A stretch of DNA of 63,966 nucleotides, counting the filler, from Salisapilia sapeloensis CBS 127946 (taxonomy: Eukaryota; Protista; Oomycota): assembly GCA_023334545.1 (NCBI GenBank). It is 4 parts of 4 records of this genome, joined end to end, with 100 filler letters (N's around TTAATTAATTAA, not from the genome) between each part and the next. Parts side by side here need not be neighbours in the genome. Positions count along the whole stretch, not along the records: positions 1 to 17,207 come from JAADVB010000342.1; 3 more parts are not named here. One strand, given 5' to 3'. The position numbers were made by a program, and so were the translations under genes. Under the pieces are notes generated by a model that worked only from the letters and a program-made list of their open reading frames with translations, did not search any database and had not been told where the DNA came from. Shown here piece by piece: positions 1 through 16,391 of the stretch; within the stretch, counting starts at the first letter, position 1, and the number at the start of each line of letters is the position of its first letter.

Positions 1-217
1 CAGACCGATCAACGTTGCCATGCTGTACTCAGACGTTAGCAAAAAGCATTTTTATCGTACATGAAGTAGTAGACATACCTGCAGTGAGGAATGGTAGGCG
101 TGAAGAAGATGGTGACTTCATTGGTCGCGTCGTCCACGTGAGTGTTCTCCAGTTCAATGACCTTGAGCTGCTCCAACGTCAACGGATGCTCCGGATCGTT
201 CACATGACGCAGCATTT
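1..217 (-). CDS. CIA2: CIA2/MIP18 (FAM96B-like) cytosolic Fe-S assembly protein, partial. 3' end cut by the window edge; 5' exon(s) not resolved.
   Basis: Joining exons 217-79 and 22-1 across a 56-nt GT-AG intron (78-23) gives [54 protein letters not shown], containing the hallmark DPEHP-TLEQL and [15 protein letters not shown] motifs. Missed by the ORF track. Confidence 0.9.
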
Positions 218-992
218 CTATTCCAGTTCACCGTCAGGATCATACAACCTCTCGCCATCCAGGACGATAGGAACGTACAGAAGATTCATTCTGACGATAT
301 ATGCACAGTGCGTTAACCTGCTGGGACAACAAAAATGCTGATTGTCCGTCCACGTAGCACAAATCTTGCAAGTCGCATGGATGCACTGATAGTAATGTGC
401 CTAGTGATGGCATATAGAGAGCCTATAGTACCACCGTCTTGCTGAACCTGATGACAATTTCTTTCCAGCGAACGCTACGTGATCCAATAATAATGGGTGT
501 TTTAAAAATATGGGCTGCCTGCTTAGGCTGATTGATTGGCTACAGAAGGCATGGACGAGGTAGACTCGCTGGAGGCACGTGTCCACCGGCGGTTTCCAAG
601 TTTCAACCTCTGATCCACTGGTCAGACTTCTGGTTCTGAGAGGGGCAGCGACTCTATAAAGTCATCTTGGCTTCCGCCCGTCTCCTCATACCGATTCCCA
701 TTGGCAATTCATGGGGAGTCCGGTGAAAATGCCCGCCGCTAATATCTTATCGTGTCTCCATCTTAATATAACTTCTGCTTTAATCAAGATTAATTTTGAC
801 CTACGTCTCGTGCCTACCACGAATGAGCTTCATCCTAAGGTGTTACGATTGTAGTGGTGGAAAAGACTTATGCGATCCAGTGCGTCGTAACGGTGCAAAA
901 AAGGGAAGAGAACGTAACCTTTAAGCCTAGGCTGTGGGAATGGATCGTGTTTTTGGAACTGGCACGCGCTCTCGAAATGTATTTTAAATCGA

Positions 993-1007
993 GCTCATTT
1001 CTCAATT
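993..1007 (+). promoter_or_regulatory. Oomycete-type Inr+FPR core promoter element of the MCO-ZIP gene
   Basis: GCTCATTTCTCAATT closely matches the oomycete consensus GCTCATTYYNCAWTT, about 75 nt upstream of the ATG at 1080. Confidence 0.6.
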
Positions 1008-1079
1008 GGCTTTGGCCTCGCCAAGACTAGCTTCGCCTCTTGGCCGCCAACTTTCCACACGCCTTCGCTTCCAGTAACA

Positions 1080-3824
1080 ATGCTTATAAGCAAAGTTGCT
1101 ACCTTCGCCGTGTTTGGAGCACTCGCCACCTTTACGGAGGCAATCAGTAACCTCAAGACCGATTGGGAGGCGTATGCATCTCCACTAGTGATCCCTGAAG
1201 TCATCGACATGACCAAGGGTGGTCATGTCGATATGCAGATGGGGCGTGGAGAGCACAACTGGACTGCTGATGGAGAGGTCAGCGGTACCACATACGGCTA
1301 CGGCCTCCGTAATGGCTCCATTAGCTTTCCTGGTCCTACGATTCGAGTATCTCGTGGTGTACCTATCTCCGTCACGTGGTACAACGAGCTCGGTCCAATC
1401 CATTTACTCGACGACCGCGTTGACTACTCTCTTACAACGGGTGAATCTGGTTGTTACCCTCATTGTGGTGTTCCCGCCGTCGTCCATGTCCACGGATTAG
1501 AATCACCTGCCGTGGATGATGGGCTTCCGATATCGACAATCTATGCGAACCAAAGTCAAACGGCTTACTACCGAAACAACCAGTCGTCATCTACAAAGCT
1601 TTACCACGACCACGCCGCTGGTTTGTCTCGAATGAACGGTTGGGCTGGCCTACTTGGTGTCTACATCATTGAAGATAACGACACGGAGCAGGAGTTTAAC
1701 GTAGATGTGGAGACTGACGTTTCTCTTATGTTTGCTGATCGTTTGGTAACAAAAGATGGAGAACTTCGCTACTCTGAAGACAGTTGCGTCGGCCTTGACG
1801 TTGATGCTTGGATTCCTGAATCATTTGGCACGGTTAATACTGTCAACGGTGTTGTTATGCCATACCTTGAAGTTCCTCCAGCACAGGCTCGCTTCCGTCT
1901 GATCAACAGTGCCAACGCCCGAAACTACAACTTTTCGATCCCGTTCGCCGACAAGTGCAAATTAATTGCCAAGGACTCTGGACTGGTTGCTTACACCGAG
2001 CCAATCCCGAGATACTTGAATATGTACCCGTTCGAGCGTGTCGAGATGATCTGCGACTTTGAAGGAGAAAACGACGGAAAGAAGTACGAGGTGACGGACA
2101 TCCCGACCATTGAGCAGGACTTGCCTTACGACTCCCATGTGCTGGAAATCCGCATTTCAGCGAACCTTCTGACTGATGAAATGGTTCACCGTGATATTCC
2201 TGACAAACTTGTCAAGTACAAAGACTTGTCAAAATTGTTCACGGAGCTTGGTGGTAAAAACCGAGCATTGATGTTGGGTGAAAATGAATACGGTTTCCAG
2301 TGTCCCGAGCGGTCCATGATTGTGTACCGGAACAAGGAGATCAACACGACGGACATTTGGAATACGCTTGCTTGCACAAAGGGAACGATTGAAAAGTGGC
2401 ACTTCAAGAACCCAACCGATGATCCTCATCCTTTCCACTGGCACGTTGTAAATGCCCAGTGTGGACCGACGGAAGAGGAAATTGATACGAACGGATTCAA
2501 GGATGTTGTTGTTATACCGAACGCCAATGCCACGAAGGACAACCCGTCGGGTGTGACGCAAGTGTGCTATGTCGCATGCACACCGCAAGACTTCCTGGTA
2601 GAGGGATCGACATGGGGACCTCGGGACTACAACTTTGACACATCTGATAGGTATGTTGCTCACTGTCACATCATGGAGCACGAAGACAATAGCATGATGA
2701 GTTGGTTCCGTATCACTGACCAAGACGATGGTATTCCCGACGACGACGGATCCGTGGTCGGTGGCTTCATCACCGGCACGGTCATCGCTACAGCCATGGG
2801 CATGAGTGTACTGGGTGGACTCGCGATGACGGCATCTGTGTTGGTCATTTCTATTGATCGTCTCAACTTCCTCGCTAGTCCGATTCCACTCTCAATTGCC
2901 TTCGCACTTTCCGCTGGAGTTATGGTATTCATCGCTGTCGGAGATCTCTTCGCAGAGTCTATCGCATTCTTCCGTGCAGCTTTCACGGTTGGTGGCAACC
3001 CTGACCCGGAGGCTTATGAAAAGGGGGGAACTGCTGATCCTGGTGTCTGCGACCTAAATTGCGTCGGGAACGCCTGGCTTACTACAACTTGCGCTTTCTT
3101 CGGTGGTGTTATTATCATCTTGCTTGTCGAATACATCGTCCACCAGGTCATTGAAAAGAAGTATGGCAGCGCACATGAGAACGGAGACGTTGCACTTTCA
3201 CCTGAACTAGCACAGAGTCCGTACTCTAAAGACGGCTTACGTTCACCTGCTTTATCGAATGGATACGAGGAGGACAACAAAGCGAAGATGCAAGAAAATG
3301 AAACTGGCACGGAAGAAGAGGATGTACTGGTGAACCAACCTACGAATGTCAAGAATGAGTATAAACGTGCAGGTATGATGACTGGCATTGCAATGGCAAT
3401 TCACAATTTCCCGGAAGGTCTGGCACTCTTCGTCGCTTCATTGCAAGGACTCCGTACGGGCATTGTACTCTCGATTGGTATCATCCTCCACAACCTGCCG
3501 GAAGGTCTGGCCGTTGCAGCGCCAGTGTACTACGCGACTGGTAGCAAGTGGGAGAGCTTCAAGTGGTCAGCCATTGCCGGTGTTGCCAACCCCATCGGTG
3601 CTGCTATCGGATGGGCAGCTGTCTCTGGAGGTCTCCCATTCTGGCTTCAGGCTCTGCTGTATAGTATGGTCGCTGGAATGCTTGTGTGCATTACAGTCAA
3701 AGAGCTGATTCCCGGTGCGTACAAGTTCGATCCTAGCGGCAAATACTTTGTCCCTGCTTTCTTCCTTGGCTTTGGCGTCATCGCTTTCAGTGTCGTCGCA
3801 CTGCACTATGCCGGATCTGGATAG
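1080..3824 (+). CDS. Secreted CotA/bilirubin-oxidase-like multicopper oxidase fused to a C-terminal ZupT/GufA-type ZIP metal transporter (914 aa, single exon)
   Basis: Signal peptide MLISKVATFAVFGALATFTEA. All four MCO copper motifs: HVHG, YHDH, HPFHWH, HCHIMEHEDNSMM. Then ~8 hydrophobic helices with ZIP TM4 AIHNFPEG and TM5 ILHNLPEG. No stop or intron between the domains. Confidence 0.93.
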   Translation: MLISKVATFAVFGALATFTEAISNLKTDWEAYASPLVIPEVIDMTKGGHVDMQMGRGEHNWTADGEVSGTTYGYGLRNGSISFPGPTIRVSRGVPISVTWYNELGPIHLLDDRVDYSLTTGESGCYPHCGVPAVVHVHGLESPAVDDGLPISTIYANQSQTAYYRNNQSSSTKLYHDHAAGLSRMNGWAGLLGVYIIEDNDTEQEFNVDVETDVSLMFADRLVTKDGELRYSEDSCVGLDVDAWIPESFGTVNTVNGVVMPYLEVPPAQARFRLINSANARNYNFSIPFADKCKLIAKDSGLVAYTEPIPRYLNMYPFERVEMICDFEGENDGKKYEVTDIPTIEQDLPYDSHVLEIRISANLLTDEMVHRDIPDKLVKYKDLSKLFTELGGKNRALMLGENEYGFQCPERSMIVYRNKEINTTDIWNTLACTKGTIEKWHFKNPTDDPHPFHWHVVNAQCGPTEEEIDTNGFKDVVVIPNANATKDNPSGVTQVCYVACTPQDFLVEGSTWGPRDYNFDTSDRYVAHCHIMEHEDNSMMSWFRITDQDDGIPDDDGSVVGGFITGTVIATAMGMSVLGGLAMTASVLVISIDRLNFLASPIPLSIAFALSAGVMVFIAVGDLFAESIAFFRAAFTVGGNPDPEAYEKGGTADPGVCDLNCVGNAWLTTTCAFFGGVIIILLVEYIVHQVIEKKYGSAHENGDVALSPELAQSPYSKDGLRSPALSNGYEEDNKAKMQENETGTEEEDVLVNQPTNVKNEYKRAGMMTGIAMAIHNFPEGLALFVASLQGLRTGIVLSIGIILHNLPEGLAVAAPVYYATGSKWESFKWSAIAGVANPIGAAIGWAAVSGGLPFWLQALLYSMVAGMLVCITVKELIPGAYKFDPSGKYFVPAFFLGFGVIAFSVVALHYAGSG

Positions 3825-3962
3825 ATGCTAGCGTACATGTTACCTTTGATAAGGTAGTCATGACGTTTCGAACAAGATTAGATGAAACAGAACTGAAATT
3901 TGCACTTTGAAGATGAGTTTTAATGACTTGATAGACTGTTTAGAAACTGCTGTAGGTGAACA

Positions 3963-5192
3963 TCACACTACGTCTGCAGCTTCATGTGGAATTCGTTTCT
4001 GCACAGACCAACCACCTTCAAGTGTTTCTGTCGCCGACACGACTGACGCTTTCTCTTCGTCGTCGGAAGTGAGGAAGGAGTCTGCCTCGGTCGCATCGTC
4101 TTCCGATGGCTGCAACTCTTCTTCTAGCACATATCCTAGCACTTTGGTTTTCAATGATCTATTGAAATGATTGAGCACATGATTCAATTTTCATCGGAGG
4201 TACATGGTTGATACGTACGTTGGGAACCAAATGTTTGTTGGAAGGAACCAATGGAGAGCCATCGAATTGGATGAGCCACCGAAAACCTCACGAACACCGA
4301 TACTGTCTCCAGTCTCACCTTTCAAACGGTCGATTTGTGTCGAACCTGTCGAGATGACGCTATACTGATCGCACATCATACATAGCGTGAAGAGACCGAA
4401 GAGCACCGCCTCCAGCACCAAGAACACAACGAGGAAAGCACCATTTGGTGGACAGGTGTCGTGTATGCATCGTGCAAATCGCATCAAGATGAGAGTGATC
4501 GCATAGGATGAGAGCAGAAAGATGTAGAAGATGAAGAGGAGAAAGAATTTGTGGTTGCCCAGTCCGACGCAATTGTTGACCCACGGGCAGTGGTGGTCCA
4601 TCTTTAGTACACAGCGGTCACATATAGAACAATGGTGAGCTCTAGCGGGCTTGAATTGCCTACATCGACGACAGGACCGATACTTTTGCTCTTCGAGTCT
4701 ATAGATCACAACGTCACCAGAGTAGTCCTATCGAGAAAAAAGTGGTTGCATACTTTTCGAGATCCTGCTTTGGGGCGTTGGCAAGCGCAACGGGGAGTGC
4801 ATTTTCAGGTACAGCCCCCGGGTCACTCATCATCGCTACAAATGGTATCAGTCTATTAGTACAGCAGATCGAATGATTTAAAATTTCATCTGAATGCTTG
4901 CCTTTGCCATGCGAGATAAGGGACATCACCGCAATCGTGGTAAAAGCACCAATGTTAAGAAGCCCGTAAAGCGACAATCCCATCCATGGATAGATAATTA
5001 CGCCCTACAGAACTATTAGCGAGCATGCTTTATGGGTGAGTCGTGAAAAGGCTGTACCACGACGATGGTCTCAGCGTAGAGTACGAGGAACCACGATATG
5101 ACCGCGCAGATGATCCCACATGGATCTCGGTTACACCATACACTAGCATTAAACCCAGTTCCACATCCGCTTCTTCTCTGCTTGCGATTCAT
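3963..5192 (-). CDS. DHHC protein S-palmitoyltransferase (ZDHHC3/7-like), multi-exon
   Basis: Start MNRKQRRSGC...WCNRDPCGIICAVISWFLVLYAE at 5192. SHGKAMMSDPGAVP after splicing. Cys-rich domain CRRCRQFKPARAHHCSICDRCVLKMDHHCPWVNNCVG. Last exon ends at TGA 3965-3963. Confidence 0.92.
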
Positions 5193-5801
5193 CCTACTTC
5201 GACCTTGACCGGATCAAGCAGCTTTTGTACTGCTCTGATGTGATTTTATCGGTATGTGACGGTACCATATGTATACTTGAAATTAGCTAAATGCGCATGC
5301 TAACTGCGAAAAAACTGACATCTACTTTTTCAGGAGATACTGTGGTGCACAATCAGCAGTTTTCACTTCCTAAATTAGGGGTCAAAGTTGTAAAAAAATC
5401 GTCTTATAAGTTTATGTCTTGAGTGCTGATATTTTCGTCATCCAATTCTTATATTTTCCGTCCTACAATCCAAATCAGCTACCTCCAGAGGTAGCTGATA
5501 TACAAATATCGGATGTTGATTATCTGAAAAGTCCGATAATTCTGCAGTCCGGCGAAGATAATCATGGACACAGTCTACTGATACTTTCTGCGCAATCTGG
5601 AAACTTTGACTCCCCTTGTTTAAAATCTGTACACACTTCGAATGACTAAAAGACAATATTTTGGAAGAATAAGGCGTCGGTTTTGACATCCTCATTTCTG
5701 TTTAAGCAACGCACACGTTTTGTATTCATGCTCCCTGTGTTTTCTTACTTTGTCATCTCTTTCACATCTTTCATGTCATATTCACTTATAGTATCGACGG
5801 T

Positions 5802-6564
5802 CTATTCATAATGGTATGAAATTAGCTCAAAATATGCGCGTTCTTTCGTCGCAACTTTACAACTTTGTCCACCGGAAATGATATCATAGAGTAGTCGTAT
5901 GCCTTCTTCGACAGTGAGAGGAGAACCGGCATCTCCATCGCAAGCTCCATTTTCGACGGTTCCTACTTTTGCATAGATGACAGTGTCAGGTTTCTCGCCA
6001 CCACAAGACTATTCATCAATGGAGGCAAAGATAAGCTTAAATTTACGTAGCCAGCCAATATTTGAGTAAGAGTAATGAGGCGACCCCTTTCCATACCCAT
6101 ATACTTTGGCAGTGGATTGAGTTCGACTCGTCACTTCCTTCATCATAGCGATGGGAGTAAATCTACTGGAAACGATTGTTTTATAAGACCAATGTTGTTC
6201 CCTTTCTGGAATACTCGATTTCATTCATAAGCTGGTTTTGTGACGCCTTTCGTGCCAGTCAAGTGGTCCTCTATCGTGGCATTTTTAACCTCACAGTCTG
6301 CGTGACGGCTTTAATAAAGTGGGCAGCTGTAAGGATCCATTGAGGTCGGATGAGTACACCAGCGCGTATTGATCGTCCCTCCATAATCTAAGCGACATAC
6401 GGCACTTTATTGACTTCCGAGTCAAGAATGAATGGAGCGTTTTGACAGTTTATAGATGTCTGCGGGCTTATAGCCTCAACAGTGACAAACGGGTCATCGA
6501 AGAGTGCACTCGTCGAGTTGGTCGGGAAGAAGATGAGAGTGCACAGCAAGAGAAGGATAGGCAT
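5802..6564 (-). pseudogene. Decayed secreted trypsin-fold (S1) protease homologue, non-catalytic/GIP-like
   Basis: Signal peptide MPILLLLCTLIFF, then KVPYVA*IMEGRSIRAGVLIRPQWILTAAHF, NNIGLIK, TAKVYGYG, DE*SC, GACDGDAGSPL and LLYDIISGG. In-frame TAG stops at 6390-6388 and 6011-6009 plus frameshifts near 6270-6180. Confidence 0.8.
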
Positions 6565-6850
6565 GATTGCTTTGGTCAGAAGTTTGATTTCTGAGCAGTA
6601 GTAGTACGTGCAGAATATTCTGCTCCCAATCCCAGGTTGCCATATGATTCCCAAATAAATGCTATATCCACCTATCTATTCGCTATCTACGGTCCAATTC
6701 TGTTAACGGCGCAATGCAAACCATTTGTTTCAGCATATCGGCCTTGGATACTTACTCGTAGTTAACACTTAATATATTTTCATGATCTACTACAATATAA
6801 AAAGTAACTCATTTAATTAAAAATATTATTCGGTTAATAGATAGCGTATA

Positions 6851-9397
6851 TTATTCGCAACCCAGCCAGGCTTCAACTTCCGGATCACAGGGAGGCCCGA
6901 TCTTTTTCTCGATTTGCTGTTTACGGAGCTCGAGGAGAATGGAGTTTGTAATGCACGAAATTGCCATTAATCGGCGGTTATAGCACATTGATGGTGTGGT
7001 ATCTGCACCTGTTGGTCATTGTTTGTACATTACACCTCCACAAACCTTTGTGTTTTCTTCTGTTGGGAATGAAAAGCCATCCTCCATAGATCCTCGTAGC
7101 AACTGACAAACAGATTAGTTGAATTTGTTGAACAGCGCTACCATCTTTGGAGATGCTCTACTAGCATTAGCATGTAAACATAACTATGGTGGATCGCTGC
7201 TTAGTGGCTTTGCTTGACAGTATTGATGCTCGAGGTTGCACTGTCCAAGAAACCCGTTGCAACATATAGGAATACGAAGTATGATTGCAAGCACGTTCAG
7301 ATCGACTCCAGCGTCAAGACTAGGAAGAGTACGTAGTTTTGGAGCATGGACGATTGTGTGTGCCTTCAAGTTGCGTACGCTATCGAAGGAGGGCAGACTT
7401 GCAAGCGAATCAAATTTAGCAATTGTAAATGCTCGGAGATTAACGAGGTCATCGAAAGATGTTATTTATTTAAAATGAGGATGAACACCAAGATGAAGAA
7501 AGACGAGACGCTGCTTATTGTCGAAGAAGTTTGTAGGTATACGAACAAGATTGGTGTCTTCCTTTTTGCCTTCGATGTGCCTAAATGACAAAGTTACTTA
7601 GACAGAGTGATTATAGCCTACTTACATACAATATTTCAAGACTCGACATTGCGTTGGCTCAATCGGGTATCTCCATCAATTCAGTGTACATGAGGTATCT
7701 ACATGCCATTGTAAAATAATATTATGTCTAAACGCAGGATACAAATAGCTATGCATCTTCACGTACATTTGGTGCAAACTTGTGCAGGCCGCCATTTCTT
7801 TGGGTAACTTCTTCAAACCTCGATTACCAATCTTTAGTATCTATAGATATTCTGACTGGGTCATTTCTTTTTATTTATTTATGGCATCTTTGGGTTTTAA
7901 CCACCCTTCATAACTCTTTGATGCTATTTCAGCGTCCACAAGCTCAAGGCAAGGACAATTTTCTGTTCTTCGCCAATGATAGGCAAAAATGGTTTACTCA
8001 TGGTGATGGTAACAAGCAGCTTCAGAATGTCGTGCGGCTTCCATTGGAACGGCAAGTGCAAGAATAGCGCATGCTACGAACTAAATTGGGATTATTCGAG
8101 ATACTTCAATCTGTGTACGCTTTTTGGCCACTACAACTATCGGCTGTAATCTTGTTTACATGCTCTTTGCTTCATATATAAAAGTTTCTGTGATACGAAT
8201 CAGGCGGTAAGAAGATGACAAGTGCAGAGCTATTTGCACAACAAAGTCTGAAAACTGGCGAGTAAGAAGGGTGCTGAAGCTGACCAGAAATTGCGTCGTT
8301 TCTATAGAGTCACCTGCGCGCCCGGCGACACGTTCAAGGTACCCTCCTGGAATTACCTCTCTGTTCAACTAGAGCATATCATGATCCAGTTCTAACCTCG
8401 AGTGAGAGAAAACGAGAGAAGTCATTGGAAATCCAATGGCGACTATCGCATCGAAGTTATAAAAATTGAACCTTGTGAATAGTCAATTTATATCCAGGTA
8501 AAAGGCGTACGTACACAAGCCCGAACACTGCTTCGATGAAGGACAATATGCGTCGTCTGCATGATACAAGTCCAGCGTATGATAGAGAATTACAAAACCC
8601 CAACGCTCCGCAAGCATACATGAGTTCTAAGGAGCTCGATCCCATAATTTGATAGAGAACTGCTGCTTGCAGAGCAATGCCAACAACTTCTTGTCCGATA
8701 TTCTAACGGAGCATTTTATCATTGAAGACATCAAAACGTTAAACATGGACATCTATTGTAAACTACTGCGTACTCACGGACAACGATTTGGCCCCTCGTA
8801 ATCCAAAACATCATCGTCAGGGCGAAGAGGGTATAATGCTTTACGGAAGAAAGTTTTCTTTTGAACAATTTGATGCTTCTGTTTGAAGCTTGAATTGGTC
8901 GCGCTCAGAAAGACAAGTAAAGCGACCACTTTCGCAAACAGCAGTGCAACCACTATTAGACTGATAACACTCAATACTGTGAGCTCTAGATCTGGCTTTC
9001 CTATTAGGCAAGATTCTCCATCATCATAGTCTGAAGTAACTGTCAGAATATTGACTGTCTCATTCGGGTACATGTTCAGTGCGATGAGCCATAGGACCCG
9101 AATGATAAACGTGATCGTGAGAGCTAGTAGCGGGGGTCCATAGAGCCCGGATATATCAAAGAAGGTAAAATTGTCTTGCTTATAAACAGCATTTTGCCTC
9201 CTTCCGTGTTGAGCCATCTCCACATTTGGTCGGTGATTTTCTGATATTGGCGGAACTGCAAATCGTTGAGAGGCGAACGAATTATCCTTGAAGCTTACCG
9301 TGTCTACTGGAGCGCCAGAAGCAGGACCGACTTATAAAATCTTCTGCCATGTTAAATCTCCTTCCTTCGCCATAGCATTATCTTCTTTACCAGGCAT
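6851..9397 (-). pseudogene. Decayed member of the expanded oomycete multi-TM + LRR family ending in CDPxxEAWLGC
   Basis: Family-like blocks in order: GLYGPPLL, PNETVNIL...YDDG, YLERVAG...QFLVSF, CPCLELVD, LRR-like segments, CCNGFLGQC, CYNRRLMAISC, and the terminus IEKKIGPPCDPEVEAWLGCE* at 6853-6851. Many in-frame TAG/TAA/TGA stops and frameshifts. Confidence 0.8.
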
Positions 9398-10237
9398 TCT
9401 GTATCGTGTATTGTAATTTGTACAGGTTTTAAATCCTAATTTAACGTATTGGGGTTCTAAGACGGCAGTGCTTAGGCGGGTCGCCACTACAAAAGAAACA
9501 TTGCTTTCTATTCTTAAAAGATGGATATGAAACTGAAGCGAAGTGTTAAAATAAAGAACTACGATGTATGTTGGAGTGCAGTCTGAGATGATCAAGCGAT
9601 GCATGAGCGCCACCTAAAACTAGGGGTTCTAGCAGAGTGTATACCGGTTAAAGAGATTTTCCGCTGGGTCGTTACAGAATTTTCATTTTGGCCCGGTTCC
9701 TATATCCGCACATGTATCAAAATGTCGTATCGGTGGAAAGGATATACTTCGCTTTGTGTCGATTGGAGCATGACAAATGCGCGTATATCGAAGCTTTTAT
9801 TACTGCTACAACTATTAATTCATTTTACTATGTCCAGGGTTTTGCCTCTTCAATTTCGCGCAGCTACTTTCTTTCAACACAGATATCTAGCCATCTAATA
9901 TCCGACGAAAGAATACTAGAATGATTATTAGAGTTGCTTACAGGCCTGCTGGTTGGTATTTCTCAATGTATTTCCCTGACCTAAGTTCGCCTCCACTGAT
10001 CACCTACACAATGGGACTCAGCACACTCTAGCCGAGTAATCGGAAGGACCCAACGATAGTGCAGAACCCAAGTTTCCATTCAACTCTTAAAGAGCGCATA
10101 ATCACTCGGCCAAGGCTTGATCAAAATAAAAAAATATCCATCTGTCCGAATAAATTCTAAACTTATGTGCAAAGTATGCAAGTATACACTACTTGCGGAT
10201 GAACAAGATATTTTGACAGAAAAAAGAAGAGAGCGAA

Positions 10238-12621
10238 ATGGCGCTTAATGTCGAGTTTGATGGCCGTTCAAAGCGTGTACCAGTGACACCAGGCACTACA
10301 ATGGTTCGTATAGCTATTCCTTATATTCACTCTATCATCAGACCTGAAAATTATGTCTGTCGGAGTACAGTTTCAGGTGCTCGAAGCAGCTTGTAGCAAG
10401 TTCGGACTATCGAGGCCACCATCTTCCTACCAGTTGACACATCGGAGGCAACCGATCGACATGTCTATCCCATTTCGACTTACAGGCATTTCCAATAACG
10501 CTACGTTGGAATTGAAAGAAAGCACAAACAACAAGGGCAATACGGCGTCCAATACCACCATCCGAGTCGCGGTGCAGTTACTTACTGGGCAACGTGTACA
10601 GTCCTCTTTCTCAAGCAATACAACCATCAGCTATATCCTGTCAACACTTGAGATACCAGCTTCATCGAAATCCAACTTTGCTTTGGGCTTTTTGCATCAG
10701 GAGATCTCTCCAGAGAATTTCGAGACAACAACGTTGAAAGACTTGGGACTGTTGCAAGGCTCTGCCATGTTCCGCATGAAGTCTATTGAACGAGAATTAT
10801 ATGCTCCAGCGGTCCCGACAGCATCTGCAAGGTCGCCTCCACCTGGTCCAGCTTCTCCAGACGCGAAGCAATCCTCAGAAGCGGATGAAAAGGCTGTAAA
10901 GTTTGCACGAGAAGACCAAACGATTGGAACATCAGCTGGCGTAGAAATAAAGAGTGCTCCACCTCTTCCAGCATCTTTAGACTCAAAGCCAGTCGTGGAG
11001 GACGAAAAGAAGGCTGTACAGTTTGCATCTACAGAGCAAACGATCGGGACGTCAGCTGGAGTTGAACTGGAGAGCTCATCACCTACGGAGCCACCATATG
11101 AGATAGATGAACCGATGGACAAGGAGATGAGCAGTTATGATGCTCTTCAGCTGATTCGTGACAGTCAGTTCGACGCTTCTTCTAAACGATCTGTCCTGAC
11201 GCTTTCCAAGATCGTTGCCAATATCCTTTCATACCCTGGTTTGTTTCACATATCACCAAAATATATAATCAACAACTTTCTAACTCGTATCGACTAGACA
11301 ACGAGAAAATGCGGTCCATTAGGCTGACAAATAAGGCCTTTCGTCGAGACGTAAGGGACGTAAAGGGAGGACTAGAGTTTTTGTGCACTTTAGGCTTTGC
11401 CATTAATCGACAGACGGAGAAAATTGAGCTCCTGGAGCTATCGCCACAAGTGGTGGAGAAACTACAGGAAGGTTTTAAGTGGTTGCAGGATGAAGCGGAT
11501 GATCTCGGGATTGATGCTGGTGACCGCCCAGAAGTCGTAAAGCCGGCGGAAGGGGACCCGAACTTTGATGTTTTCCATTCTCAAATTACTCGATTCCAAG
11601 TAAGTAGTATAAAAGTACGAATCATATGAAGATGATACGAACTAGATGTGTACAGATGCAACCAAGAGGGCCAAGTGCGACTGAAGCTCAGCTGGAAGAG
11701 CTCAAGTCCAAGCAGGAAAAGCTTATTCCGTCCGATTTACCTCCTCGTAACACAATGGTCTTTTTAGACGGTGTGCCACACAGCAGTGCATCCTCTTTCA
11801 TGGAAAATGAGGCACAAGGTAGTGACTCTCAACTACTTGTTTCTAGTCTTAAGCACAAGCAGTCAGAATTGGAGAAAGCGAACGTACAAATAATACACTT
11901 ATCTCGATGTACATGCTGCAAACTGACCTCATGGCTGTAGAAATTCCAAACGAAAGCGATGCGAGAGTTAGATGAATTAAAACGGAAGAAGGTGTATCAG
12001 AAGACACTCATTCGTATTCAATTCCCAGATCGAGGTATCTTATTATCTATACCATGCCGTCCTACCCTCTTATATATTTCGTCCGTTCTAGTGATACTGC
12101 AAGCATATTTCCATCCGAATGAAAAGGTAGCAGACGTAGAAGCGTTTGTTAAAGAGAGCTTGGCGCCATCCGCACAATACGCCTTTTACTTGTACGTGAC
12201 GCCACCTCGACAGCGCCTGGACTCTGCCAAGTCACTCTCGGACCTTCAGCTTGTACCTGCTGCCCATACATACCTAAGTTGGCATGACTCTCCACCAACT
12301 TCATCAAGTGATCTGCCTGGCTCGTATCTCCTTCCTGAGCTGGTAACAACTGGACGTTAAATCACTTGATAGCAAGTCACTAAGCATGTCCATAGACGAC
12401 GACAGAAGAAGCTGATGCCAAGTCGTCCACTGCGGATGTGGTTGCTTACCCGACCTCGGTGCCTCTCAGTACCTATTTATTATCTCTAGTATCTTGTATT
12501 CTTCTAATAACCATTCGTAGCGCAAGAAGAAAAAGCAGAGGCTAAAAAGGAGACAAAGTCAGAGTCCAAGGCGTCAAGCAAAAGCAAGAGTGGGAAGAAG
12601 CCAGGATGGCTCAAGCTCTAA
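10238..12621 (+). CDS. ASPSCR1: TUG/ASPSCR1-like p97 (Cdc48) adaptor with UBL1, UBL2, PUB and UBX domains, multi-exon
   Basis: Exon 1 MALNVEFDGRSKRVPVTPGTTM spliced to FQVLEAACSKF...IPFRLTGISNNATLEL (TUG UBL1). PUB-like KIVANILSYP...MRSIRLTNKAF...GGLEFLCTLGF. UBX KTLIRIQFPD...FYLYVTPP. C-terminus KKPGWLKL*. Confidence 0.85.
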
Positions 12622-15644: not shown

Positions 15645-16391
15645 TTACTTCTTGGCCTTGGACTTGGCCGCCGTCTTCTTCGTTGCCGTCTTCTTGGCCG
15701 CAGGCTTCTTGGCAGGCGCCTTCTTCACAGTTGTCTGCTTCTTGGCAGTAGACGACACCTTTTTCGTCGGGGCCTTCTTCTTCGCCACAGCCTTCTTGGT
15801 CGACGCAGCAGACTTCTTGGCCGTCGTCGTCTTTGTCGCACTCTTTGCAGCAGTCTTCTTTGGCGTTTTCACGGCAGTCTTTGGCTTCTTGGCTGCCTCC
15901 TTCTTCAACTGAGCGCCAAGCTTGTACGAAGCCTTGACTTGTACGAGCTTACCGTTCTCAACGGCGCTACGCAGGACGCGGTTGAGCATGTGGTTCATGT
16001 AGTCATCCTTCTTGCGCTCCTCCACGTAACGCTGGATTAGCTGACGGGAAGTACCGGATCGCTCGTTGTAGTGCTGAATGGCTTCCACGATTAGTTCCAT
16101 GTACGTCGGGCCACCGTCCGTGGAGGCCGTCACCTTCTTCTTGCTCGCAACCTTCTTGGGTTTCTTCGCCACAGCAGCCTTACGAGGTGGAGGGGCGCTT
16201 GCTTGACGCTTGGCTACCTCAGCAGCACGCATGGCCTGTGTCTTCGCCTTTCGCTTCGGGGCACTACGGGTCGGAGTCGTGGCAGCTTTCGGCGTCGAAG
16301 ATTTGGCAGACTTATCTTCCACGGGCGCCGTGTCAGTAACGATGACAGTCGTCTCGACCGTCTTGGTCACAACAGGAGTTTCTTCACTCAT
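15645..16391 (-). CDS. H1: Linker histone H1 with winged-helix globular domain and Lys/Ala-rich tail
   Basis: PTYMELIVEAI...ERSGTSRQLIQRYV...LRSAVENGKLVQVKASYKL, followed by a K/A/T-rich tail. A CCAAT box lies upstream (ATTGG at 16546-16550). Confidence 0.93.
   Translation of the reverse strand: MSEETPVVTKTVETTVIVTDTAPVEDKSAKSSTPKAATTPTRSAPKRKAKTQAMRAAEVAKRQASAPPPRKAAVAKKPKKVASKKKVTASTDGGPTYMELIVEAIQHYNERSGTSRQLIQRYVEERKKDDYMNHMLNRVLRSAVENGKLVQVKASYKLGAQLKKEAAKKPKTAVKTPKKTAAKSATKTTTAKKSAASTKKAVAKKKAPTKKVSSTAKKQTTVKKAPAKKPAAKKTATKKTAAKSKAKK

What the first reader, a model, noticed from the sequence alone, without database searches (positions are those of the whole stretch)
1080..3824. Single-chain multicopper oxidase-ZIP transporter fusion: a candidate redox-coupled metal uptake machine
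Seen in sequence: one intronless 914-aa ORF with a signal peptide, a three-domain MCO carrying all four copper motifs (including the T1 Cys and an axial Met ten residues later), a short strongly acidic linker (ITDQDDGIPDDDG), and a complete ZupT-like ZIP with HNxPEG motifs in both TM4 and TM5. Established: ZIP N-termini face outside the cytosol, so the oxidase would sit on the uptake face; fungi couple the ferroxidase Fet3 to the Fe3+ permease Ftr1 as two separate proteins; ZIPs carry divalent ions. Inference: this is a covalent analogue of Fet3/Ftr1 built on a different transporter family. It could oxidise Cu+ to Cu2+ for import, or handle Fe or Mn, with the acidic linker passing metal along. 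I know of no functional characterisation, but cannot exclude that the architecture is already annotated in other oomycetes.
Basis: partly seen in the sequence, partly recalled or inferred. Interest (0 to 1): 0.88.

Follow-up and report, generated by a model that had tools for sequence, protein, structure and literature searches.

The report
Oomycete copper oxidase fused to ZIP transporter
The gene is real and is expressed as one messenger RNA: it joins an outward-facing copper oxidase that looks like an iron oxidase to a ZIP metal transporter, a design found in this survey only in water moulds (oomycetes), already present in databases, and with no functional study found in the literature searched.

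Summary
ORF 1080-3824 (+) encodes 914 aa: a signal peptide, a three-domain multicopper oxidase (MCO) with all four copper motifs, an acidic tether, and an 8-helix ZupT-like ZIP with HNxPEG in TM4 and TM5. RNA contigs from four runs (two samples) cover the whole ORF as one unspliced piece, while the neighbouring gene is spliced.

About 80 full-length homologues (48-63% identity) occur across Pythium, Globisporangium, Phytophthora, Lagenidium, Albugo, Aphanomyces, Saprolegnia and Achlya. Copper ligands, ZIP metal residues and the DD-x4-DDG tether are conserved. In a library of 1.84 billion representatives, only this one cluster combines both domains.

The oxidase belongs to the CotA/LPR1 lineage. 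It carries the Glu and Asp that LPR1 ferroxidases use to bind Fe2+ and that CotA lacks. Iron is therefore the best-supported substrate, over copper or manganese.

My best reading is a covalent ferroxidase-permease for iron handling or uptake. It is analogous to Fet3/Ftr1 but is not a member of that system. The mechanism is untested, and the ZIP metal site looks like an ordinary divalent-ion site.

The architecture is already annotated in many oomycete genomes. I found no paper describing it.

The parts
949..3912 (+). Transcript: one unspliced mRNA covering the 5' UTR, the whole ORF and the 3' UTR
   Evidence: single contigs span 1020-3912, 975-3907, 1011-3898 and 949-3853 in four RNA runs. There are no joints and no differing letters.
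1080..3824 (+). ORF of 914 aa, stop codon included: the MCO-ZIP fusion protein
1080..1145 (+). N-terminal signal peptide (aa 1-22, MLISKVATFAVFGALATFTEAI)
   Evidence: The hydrophobic leader is read from the sequence. AF2 models it as a low-confidence helix at aa 4-22, detached from the fold. The cleavage site itself is inferred.
1146..2723 (+). Extracytosolic three-domain multicopper oxidase (aa 23-548) of the CotA/LPR1 lineage
   Evidence: TM is 0.82 to CotA. Rice and Arabidopsis LPR1 are among the top Swiss-Prot structural hits.
1485..1493 (+). Copper motif 1, H136-V-H138 (trinuclear cluster)
   Evidence: H136 is invariant in both alignments; H138 is invariant in the 72-row alignment and nearly so in the 20-row one.
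1605..1613 (+). Copper motif 2, H176-D-H178 (trinuclear cluster)
1809..1829 (+). WIPESFG. E247 aligns with the first acidic-triad residue of LPR1-type ferroxidases (E269 in LPR1).
   Evidence: E247 is invariant in the family, whereas CotA-like proteins have Ala here.
2097..2132 (+). Variable surface loop DIPTIEQDLPYD. It corresponds to the LPR1 linker that holds the middle triad Asp. E344 aligns with that Asp, and Y350-D351 are invariant.
   Evidence: The strict LPR1 motif 2 is not matched.
2409..2444 (+). NPTDDPHPFHWH. D448 is the third acidic-triad position (it fits NxTx[DEG]xHP). This is followed by the T1 His H450 and copper motif 3 (H453, H455).
2661..2696 (+). Copper motif 4, H528-C529-H530...H534...M539 (T1 Cys, T1 His and axial Met)
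2724..2750 (+). Conserved acidic tether DDGIPDDDG (aa 549-557; family pattern DD-x4-[DN][DE]G)
   Evidence: It is present in all fused proteins and absent from MCO-only relatives, apart from one recent tandem copy. pLDDT is about 75 over aa 551-560.
2775..3821 (+). ZupT/GufA-type ZIP permease with 8 transmembrane helices (aa 566-914)
   Evidence: ZupT, ZTP29 and zntB are the top Swiss-Prot structural hits. TM is 0.77 to BbZIP.
2985..3068 (+). Extracytosolic TM2-TM3 loop (aa 636-663). It is acidic (D642, E644, E647) and holds the conserved C657-x3-C661-x-G motif.
   Evidence: The CxxxCxG motif is shared with the closest unfused protist ZIPs.
3150..3338 (+). Disordered cytosolic TM3-TM4 loop (aa 691-753). 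It is poorly conserved (17% identity) except for an invariant Pro723, preceded by Ser in most sequences.
3402..3419 (+). TM4 metal-site motif HNFPEG (aa 775-780)
   Evidence: The motif is invariant.
3489..3506 (+). TM5 metal-site motif HNLPEG (aa 804-809)
   Evidence: H, N, P, E and G are invariant.

Best explanation
Shown:
- The gene encodes one polypeptide, made from one unspliced mRNA.
- Its parts, in order, are a signal peptide, a CotA/LPR1-lineage three-domain multicopper oxidase with complete T1 and trinuclear copper sites, a conserved acidic DD-x4-DDG tether, and an 8-helix ZupT/GufA-type ZIP permease with an intact HNxPEG/HNxPEG metal site.
- The fusion arose once, before the Saprolegniales and Peronosporales lineages split. 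Its two halves have co-diverged since. In the databases searched it is confined to oomycetes.

Inferred:
- The oxidase sits on the extracytosolic face, either outside the cell or in a lumen, directly over the entrance of the permease.
- It is a metal oxidase, most probably a ferroxidase. It keeps the Glu (E247) and Asp (D448) that LPR1-type enzymes need for Fe2+ binding and that the laccase CotA lacks.

Most likely mechanism:
- Fe2+ is captured at the acidic site next to the T1 copper and oxidised, while O2 is reduced to water at the trinuclear cluster.
- Because the two activities are covalently held together, oxidation controls what reaches the ZIP pore.
- The protein would then act as an oxidase-dependent iron acquisition or handling device. 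It is analogous in logic to Fet3/Ftr1, but built from an LPR1-like oxidase and a ZIP.
- Whether the ZIP carries the oxidised product or a divalent ion is not known.
For: - The ORF and its motifs are confirmed, as are the domain assignments.
- The transcript is single and unspliced in 4 runs from 2 samples, while the neighbouring gene is spliced.
- About 80 full-length homologues span the oomycete orders. All copper ligands, E247, Y350-D351, HNFPEG and HNxPEG are invariant or nearly so, and D448 is acidic throughout, with Glu in Albugo.
- The tether motif occurs in every fused protein and is absent from MCO-only relatives.
- MCO and ZIP pairwise identities correlate at r=0.91.
- Only one 50%-identity cluster among 1.84 billion representatives has both domains.
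- The LPR1 acidic-triad definition and its mutagenesis come from PMC9168544. E247 and D448 align with the LPR1-type triad, while the CotA-like protein has Ala and Phe at those positions.
- The nearest non-oomycete MCOs include a moss LPR1-like protein and proteins with complete triad motifs.
- The structural neighbours are rice and Arabidopsis LPR1 and CotA for the oxidase, and ZupT, ZTP29 and BbZIP for the permease.
- Topology is supported by 8 of 9 sequons and 11 Cys lying in the ectodomain, by acidic outer loops, and by 8 TM helices.
Against: - No biochemical or genetic data exist for any family member in the literature I could search.
- The ZIP metal site is the ordinary ZupT-type site for divalent ions. 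No ZIP is known to carry Fe3+, so a Fet3/Ftr1-style product relay has no precedent in this transporter family.
- Strictly applied, only one of the three published LPR1 motifs is matched. The middle-triad column is not invariant.
- The oomycete MCOs form their own long-branched clade outside the LPR1/CotA group.
- The neighbouring genes are housekeeping genes, not metal genes.
- The subcellular location, the regulation by metals, and the distance from the T1 site to the pore could not be determined.
Confidence: 0.5

Rival explanations
1. Gatekeeper or detoxifier. The ZIP imports Zn2+ or another divalent ion. The attached oxidase removes Fe2+ (or Cu+ or Mn2+) at the pore mouth by oxidising it to a form the ZIP does not carry. 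This sharpens selectivity and limits toxic Fe2+ influx in reducing, waterlogged habitats.
For: - The ZIP metal site is a standard, broad-spectrum ZupT-type divalent site.
- The oxidase has Fe2+-binding residues.
- This reading needs no unprecedented Fe3+ transport by a ZIP.
- From general knowledge, oomycetes live in wet soils and water, where Fe2+ and Mn2+ can be abundant.
Against: - There is no precedent for an enzyme acting as a selectivity filter on a transporter.
- The conserved acidic tether and acidic outer loops fit cation hand-over towards the pore at least as well as they fit exclusion.
- No expression data link the gene to zinc.
Confidence: 0.2
2. Independent functions. The MCO is a surface laccase or ferroxidase acting on the cell wall or on host substrates. 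The ZIP serves mainly as its membrane anchor while transporting zinc on its own account, with no substrate coupling.
For: - In the family tree, Phytophthora paralogues replace the ZIP with a long Ser/Thr-rich tail, and Aphanomyces has soluble MCO-only copies. The oxidase can therefore work without a ZIP.
- The closest solved structure is the laccase CotA.
Against: - The fusion has been kept with co-diverging halves (r=0.91) and a fusion-specific conserved tether across the crown oomycetes.
- A mere anchor would not need an invariant ZIP metal site together with a conserved linker.
- The triad residues that CotA lacks argue for a metal substrate.
Confidence: 0.12
3. Copper route. The ectodomain is a cuprous oxidase (Cu+ to Cu2+), and the ZIP imports Cu2+. 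Alternatively, the oxidase protects the cell from Cu+.
For: - From general knowledge, ferroxidases such as Fet3p also oxidise Cu+.
- CueO is among the sequence and structure neighbours.
Against: - No Met-rich CueO-type insert is visible in the sequence.
- The CueO NCBIfam score is 140, against a cut-off of 525.
- The residues that are conserved are the LPR1-type iron triad positions.
Confidence: 0.08
4. Efflux coupling, as with ferroportin and hephaestin. The ZIP lets Fe2+ leave the cytosol, and the oxidase pulls the flux by converting it to Fe3+ outside the cell or in a storage compartment.
For: - The covalent pairing of an Fe2+ oxidase with an Fe2+-competent carrier fits this logic.
- From general knowledge, ZIP transport is not directly ATP-driven, so its direction could in principle follow the gradient.
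Against: From general knowledge, all characterised ZIPs move metal into the cytosol. Nothing in this sequence suggests a reversal.
Confidence: 0.05
5. Artefact. Two adjacent genes were merged by misassembly or by read-through of a missed stop or intron.
For: None was found.
Against: - The ORF is continuous.
- Identical single contigs occur in four RNA runs, with ends just outside the ORF.
- The architecture is the same in about 80 proteins from independent genome projects, and the locus is syntenic in Pythium oligandrum.
Confidence: 0.01

Closest known systems
Fet3p/Ftr1p high-affinity iron uptake complex of fungi (and FOX1/FTR1 of Chlamydomonas)
   Same: An extracytosolic multicopper ferroxidase is physically coupled to a membrane permease. 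Acidic residues lie near the T1 copper and on the outer face of the permease.
   Different: - Fet3p and Ftr1p are two separate proteins, whereas this is one chain.
- Fet3p is a fungal-laccase-type MCO, whereas this one is of the CotA/LPR1 type.
- The permease here is a ZIP, not an OFeT/FTR1 protein with REXXE motifs. There is no FTR1 Pfam hit.
- Fe3+ transport is established for Ftr1 and is unknown for any ZIP.
Arabidopsis LPR1 and bacterial LPR1-type ferroxidases (PMC9168544)
   Same: - It belongs to the same CotA-related MCO lineage.
- LPR1 homologues are among the closest Swiss-Prot structural neighbours.
- The first and third acidic-triad residues are conserved.
- It has an axial Met at T1.
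   Different: - LPR1 is a soluble apoplastic or ER enzyme with no transporter.
- The oomycete domain lacks the PYPxGD linker motif.
- It has Ser where motif 1 requires Y, A or F.
- It forms a separate long-branched clade.
Bacillus subtilis CotA laccase
   Same: It is the best solved-structure match (E 7e-45, TM 0.82, 27% identity). It has the same three-cupredoxin architecture and the same copper ligands.
   Different: CotA has Ala and Gly where the oomycete protein has E247 and D448. CotA oxidises bulky organic substrates and has no membrane part.
ZupT of E. coli and other GufA-subfamily ZIPs (Arabidopsis ZTP29, Dictyostelium zntB)
   Same: - The fold has 8 helices.
- HNxPEG occurs in both TM4 and TM5.
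- These are the best NCBIfam and Swiss-Prot structural matches.
   Different: - The ZupT score (166 bits) is below the equivalog cut-off (252 bits).
- There is a long disordered TM3-TM4 loop.
- There is an extended acidic TM2-TM3 loop with a CxxxC motif.
- A 550-aa enzyme is attached to the N-terminus.
LIV-1 ZIPs with large extracellular domains (for example human ZIP4)
   Same: A ZIP carries a sizeable N-terminal ectodomain that is thought to assist metal acquisition.
   Different: The ZIP4 ectodomain is a non-enzymatic helical domain, and ZIP4 belongs to a different ZIP subfamily. Here the ectodomain is a redox enzyme.
Hephaestin or ceruloplasmin with ferroportin; bacterial EfeUOB
   Same: Iron transport across a membrane is paired with oxidation of Fe2+ on the non-cytosolic side.
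   Different: The transporter families and oxidase types differ, the direction is export for ferroportin, and the components are separate proteins.

Membership tests
Three-domain multicopper oxidase | Four copper-binding motifs: HxH, HxH, HxxHxH and HCHxxxHxxxxM | tested here: met
   H136/H138, H176/H178, H450/H453/H455 and H528-C529-H530/H534/M539 are all present and conserved in the family.
Three-domain multicopper oxidase | Three cupredoxin domains, with Pfam Cu-oxidase models above threshold | tested here: met
   Cu-oxidase_3 and Cu-oxidase_2 are above their gathering scores. The middle domain is missed by Pfam, but the model superposes on CotA over aa 27-547 with TM 0.82.
LPR1-type ferroxidase (Naumann et al. 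2022, PMC9168544) | Motif 1, [WVI]xP[EA][YAF]x[GA], with the triad Glu | tested here: inconclusive
   WIPESFG has the Glu, which is invariant and aligns with the LPR1-type Glu. However, Ser replaces [YAF], so the strict pattern fails.
LPR1-type ferroxidase (Naumann et al. 2022, PMC9168544) | Motif 2, N[DTS][AG]xxP[YF]PxG[DE]x(5-10)[VI][ML]xF, with the middle triad Asp | tested here: not met
   There is no match in any oomycete family member. The loop is shorter. E344 aligns with the Asp in the window protein, but the column varies. The paper reports that this residue matters least for activity.
LPR1-type ferroxidase (Naumann et al. 2022, PMC9168544) | Motif 3, NxTx[DEG]xHP, with the triad Asp next to the T1 His | tested here: met
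   NPTDDPHP carries D448. The position is Asp, or Glu in Albugo, throughout the fused family.
LPR1-type ferroxidase (Naumann et al. 2022, PMC9168544) | Phylogenetic placement inside the LPR1 clade | tested here: not met
   The oomycete MCOs are a separate monophyletic group (100/100) on a long branch from the LPR1-like and CotA-like sequences. I therefore do not file the protein as an LPR1 family member.
LPR1-type ferroxidase (Naumann et al. 2022, PMC9168544) | Measured Fe2+ oxidase activity | not testable with these tools
   This needs an enzyme assay.
ZIP (SLC39) transporter, GufA/ZupT subfamily | Pfam Zip above threshold and an 8-TM ZIP fold | tested here: met
   Zip scores 118 bits against a cut-off of 35. 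Both models show 8 helices. TM is 0.77 to BbZIP and up to 0.84 to ZupT models.
ZIP (SLC39) transporter, GufA/ZupT subfamily | HNxPEG metal-site motifs in both TM4 and TM5 | tested here: met
   HNFPEG (775-780) and HNLPEG (804-809) are present and invariant in the family.
ZIP (SLC39) transporter, GufA/ZupT subfamily | ZupT equivalog score (NCBIfam NF003243) | tested here: not met
   The score is 165.7 bits against a cut-off of 252. The protein is ZupT-like but not a ZupT orthologue.
Fet3/Ftr1 oxidase-permease system | OFeT/FTR1-family permease with REXXE motifs | tested here: not met
   There is no FTR1 Pfam hit. The membrane part is a ZIP.
Fet3/Ftr1 oxidase-permease system | Fet3-type (fungal laccase-like) MCO with a single C-terminal TM anchor | tested here: not met
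   All the closest sequences and structures are CotA, LPR1, CueO and bilirubin oxidase.
CueO-type cuprous oxidase | Met-rich insert over the T1 site, and the CueO equivalog score | tested here: not met
   No Met-rich segment is present in the sequence. The CueO model scores 140 bits against a cut-off of 525.

The most novel reading that the evidence does not exclude
The ZIP domain depends on its own covalently attached ferroxidase. Either it imports the iron that the ectodomain has just oxidised, or its transport is gated by that oxidation. This would be the first oxidase-dependent ZIP. It would also be an independent invention of oxidase-permease iron uptake that is specific to oomycetes.
Probability: 0.3. 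Interest if true: 0.85.

Novelty: new variant of a known kind. Interest (0 to 1): 0.66.

Why it matters
Oxidase-coupled iron uptake is so far known only with FTR1-type permeases, in fungi, algae and bacteria. A ZIP hard-wired to a ferroxidase would extend that principle to the most widespread family of divalent-metal importers. It would also raise the question of what a ZIP pore can carry.

The family is conserved in Phytophthora, Pythium, Aphanomyces, Saprolegnia and Pythium insidiosum. In the databases searched it appears to be absent outside oomycetes. Little seems to be written about how oomycetes acquire iron, to judge from my literature searches. This protein gives a concrete, testable candidate and a lineage-specific surface protein.

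Even the more modest readings would be new for both protein families. These are a gatekeeper oxidase, or a ZIP-anchored ferroxidase.

Tried and rejected
- Nine literature searches and the supplement of Morris et al. 2009 found no description of the fusion. The only ZIP fusion listed there is 'EGF-like + ZIP'.
- Synteny and neighbour inspection showed orthology with Pythium oligandrum but no metal-related neighbours. It gave no functional clue.
- The candidates for non-oomycete fusions in the representative search turned out to be ZIP-ZIP proteins: P0100 from Lagenidium and P0106 from Perkinsus.
- The ESM Atlas returned only plain MCO clusters.
- Rfam and tRNA scans of the window were empty. 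The tandem-repeat scan found only a small 15-nt repeat at 15663-15725, outside the finding.
- I could not measure the distance from the T1 site to the ZIP vestibule, because the structure tool returns no coordinates or PAE. The whole-protein pTM of 0.68 says little about domain packing.
- I rejected CueO-type cuprous oxidase (no Met-rich insert), Fet3/Ftr1 membership (wrong families for both halves) and gene-model artefact (RNA and conservation evidence).
- I did not try to name the source organism beyond its position in the tree, inside the Pythium/Globisporangium/Phytophthora clade on a long tip.


Full report
**1.

The window has an uninterrupted ORF at 1080-3824 (+) of 914 aa. Pfam places Cu-oxidase_3 at aa 133-200, Cu-oxidase_2 at aa 425-548 and Zip at aa 577-903, all above their gathering scores. 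The nearest NCBIfam models are ZupT (1e-48) and CueO (8e-41), both below their equivalog cut-offs.

- HVH (136-138)
- HDH (176-178)
- HPFHWH (450-455)
- HCHIMEHEDNSM (528-539), with the axial Met 10 residues after the Cys
- the linker RITDQDDGIPDDDGS
- HNFPEG (775-780) and HNLPEG (804-809)

**2. It is one expressed gene, not a merged model.**

Four public RNA runs from two samples were laid on 1-5600. Each gives a single contig of 2.89-2.93 kb, running from 949-1020 to 3853-3912. None has a joint or a differing letter.

The intergenic stretch 375-935 is almost uncovered: three runs have nothing there, and the fourth has very low depth to about 750. The adjacent minus-strand gene (3897-5387) is spliced at five short introns. 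The runs are therefore RNA, and the oxidase and the transporter lie on one unspliced message.

The caveat is that these are assembled contigs, not single reads. Long-read cDNA would be the formal proof.

**3. The architecture is conserved across oomycetes and, as far as I can see, confined to them.**

A search of 5.8 billion proteins returned about 80 proteins of about 900 aa with the same three Pfam domains. They are 48-63% identical to the window protein. They come from Pythium, Globisporangium, Phytophthora, Nothophytophthora, Lagenidium, Albugo, Aphanomyces, Saprolegnia, Achlya and Thraustotheca, often with two or three paralogues per genome. Their names are automatic: 'ZIP family', 'Spore coat protein A', 'LPR1-like'.

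A profile of 20 members was searched against 1.84 billion cluster representatives. It found exactly one cluster covering both halves (1644 bits). Every other strong hit is MCO-only or ZIP-only. The two candidates of intermediate length are ZIP-ZIP proteins from Lagenidium and Perkinsus. The ESM Atlas shows no such cluster either. The Pythium oligandrum orthologue lies in a syntenic locus, followed by a DHHC gene on the opposite strand.

**4. Conservation pattern.**

In 20 and in 72 aligned sequences the following are invariant or nearly so:
- all copper ligands
- nine ectodomain cysteines
- E247 and Y350-D351 (D448 is nearly invariant, with Glu in Albugo)
- both HNxPEG motifs, and E875
- a C657-x3-C661 pair in the outer TM2-TM3 loop

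The tether follows the pattern DD-x4-[DN][DE]G in every fused protein. It is missing from MCO-only relatives, which end a few residues after the last strand. The one exception is a recent tandem copy in Aphanomyces stellatus.

The cytosolic TM3-TM4 loop is only 17% conserved, and AlphaFold predicts it to be disordered. MCO and ZIP pairwise identities correlate at r=0.91, so the halves have evolved together since a single fusion.

**5. Family history.**

A maximum-likelihood tree of the oxidase part shows the oomycete proteins as one clade (100/100) on a long branch from the LPR1-like and CotA-like sequences. The window protein lies inside the Pythium/Globisporangium/Phytophthora group (95/86) on a long tip.

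Two groups nest inside the fused clade: the Phytophthora proteins in which the ZIP is replaced by a 350-390 aa Ser/Thr/Gly/Asn-rich tail, and the Aphanomyces MCO-only proteins. This implies secondary loss of the ZIP. Four environmental MCO-only sequences branch below the fused clade. The fusion therefore predates the split between the saprolegnian and peronosporalean lineages.

**6. What kind of oxidase.**

The best solved relative is the Bacillus laccase CotA (E 7e-45, TM 0.82). Among reviewed proteins, the best structural matches are rice LPR1 homologue 1, CotA and Arabidopsis LPR1.

Naumann et al. (PMC9168544) showed that LPR1 is a high-affinity ferroxidase. Its Fe2+ site is an acidic triad (E269, D370, D462) embedded in three motifs. 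CotA lacks the triad, and the middle Asp matters least for activity.

In the window protein:
- E247 (WIPESFG) aligns with the first triad residue.
- D448 (NPTDDPHP) aligns with the third.
- A CotA-like control has Ala and Phe at those two positions.
- E344 aligns with the middle Asp, but that column varies within the family.

The nearest non-oomycete MCOs in the large library include a moss LPR1-like protein and several proteins with all three motifs.

Applied strictly, only motif 3 matches, and the clade is separate. I therefore call the domain LPR1-like in its substrate site, not a member of the LPR1 family. There is no CueO-style Met-rich insert. Iron is thus the best-supported substrate, copper and manganese are less supported, and none has been tested.

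**7. What kind of transporter.**

A model of the C-terminal part has 8 helices. It matches ZupT from many bacteria, Dictyostelium zntB and Arabidopsis ZTP29 (TM up to 0.84). It also matches the BbZIP crystal structures (TM 0.77).

The closest unfused relatives are protist ZIPs of about 350 aa, from MMETSP and metagenomes. They start directly at TM1 and share the CxxxCxGxAW loop motif. They lack the tether.

The metal site is the normal ZupT-type site. Nothing in it points to a trivalent substrate.

**8. Topology.**

The evidence all places the oxidase on the same, non-cytosolic side as the ZIP entrance:
- a hydrophobic leader
- 8 of 9 N-glycosylation sequons and 11 Cys in the ectodomain
- acidic outer loops, with no Lys or Arg in the tether
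- the ZIP fold's extracytosolic N-terminus (general knowledge from BbZIP and ZIP4)

The whole-protein model has mean pLDDT 83 and pTM 0.68, and the tether is moderately confident. I could not obtain coordinates, so I could not measure the geometry.

**9. Mechanism.**

Several things are shown. Both halves look active. They are covalently joined by a conserved acidic tether. They are co-expressed and have been co-inherited through the oomycete radiation.

It is inferred that the ectodomain oxidises Fe2+ next to the pore. My preferred reading (about 0.5) is an oxidase-dependent iron uptake or handling device with the logic of Fet3/Ftr1. The weak point is that no ZIP is known to carry Fe3+.

The rivals are:
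- a gatekeeper that strips Fe2+ from a Zn2+-importing ZIP (0.2)
- independent functions, with the ZIP acting as an anchor (0.12)
- a copper route (0.08)
- efflux coupling (0.05)
- an artefact (0.01)

The neighbouring genes are a DHHC palmitoyltransferase, a TUG-UBL1 protein, an NSD-like SET/PHD methyltransferase and a linker histone. They give no hint about function.

**10. Novelty.**

The sequence family is already in the public databases, so the window gene itself is a new orthologue of an annotated but unnamed family. Nine full-text searches found no paper that describes or tests the fusion. That library omits most subscription journals, so this is absence of evidence only.

Measured against known systems, a single-chain LPR1-like oxidase plus ZIP is a new variant of the oxidase-permease idea.

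Noticed in passing
window 3897-5387 (-): This is a DHHC palmitoyltransferase gene (Pfam DHHC, 3e-37). RNA contigs show five short introns of 53-82 nt, one of them with GC-AG ends. In run X1 only, the contig also crosses a joint at 5250-5333 whose ends read GT..AG on the + strand. That is the opposite orientation to the other joints, so two overlapping transcripts may have been assembled together.
   Followed up: partly
window 1-218: A highly expressed spliced transcript (depth 285-611, intron 22-79) matches the window edge with two differing letters (142 G>A, 150 C>T). It then runs on into unrelated sequence after 218. It may come from an allele or a paralogue, or a further intron may lie there.
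   Followed up: no
window 3243-3248 (aa S722-P723): Pro723 is invariant, preceded by Ser in most of the 20 aligned proteins. It sits in the otherwise unconserved, disordered cytosolic TM3-TM4 loop. It could be a proline-directed phosphorylation site that regulates the transporter.
   Followed up: no
P0083, P0084, P0096 (Phytophthora paralogues): These proteins have the same oxidase, but the ZIP is replaced by a 350-390 aa Ser/Thr/Gly/Asn-rich low-complexity tail ending in KCDG[ED]. They nest inside the fused clade, so the ZIP was swapped for what looks like a mucin-like surface stalk.
   Followed up: partly
hit list: No homologue from a downy mildew (Peronospora, Plasmopara, Bremia, Hyaloperonospora) appears among the 95 hits, although the obligate biotroph Albugo has one. 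This may reflect gene loss in downy mildews. I did not verify it.
   Followed up: no
P0100 (Lagenidium giganteum), P0106 (Perkinsus olseni): These proteins of about 620 aa contain two ZIP domains in tandem. They are either real ZIP-ZIP fusions or merged gene models.
   Followed up: no
window 5400-10350: This stretch is richer in AT (GC 0.40-0.43, against 0.47-0.51 elsewhere). It has no ORF longer than 149 aa. RNA coverage was examined only to 5600.
   Followed up: no
window 15663-15725: A 15-nt tandem repeat (4.2 copies) lies inside the linker-histone ORF (15645-16391, minus strand).
   Followed up: no
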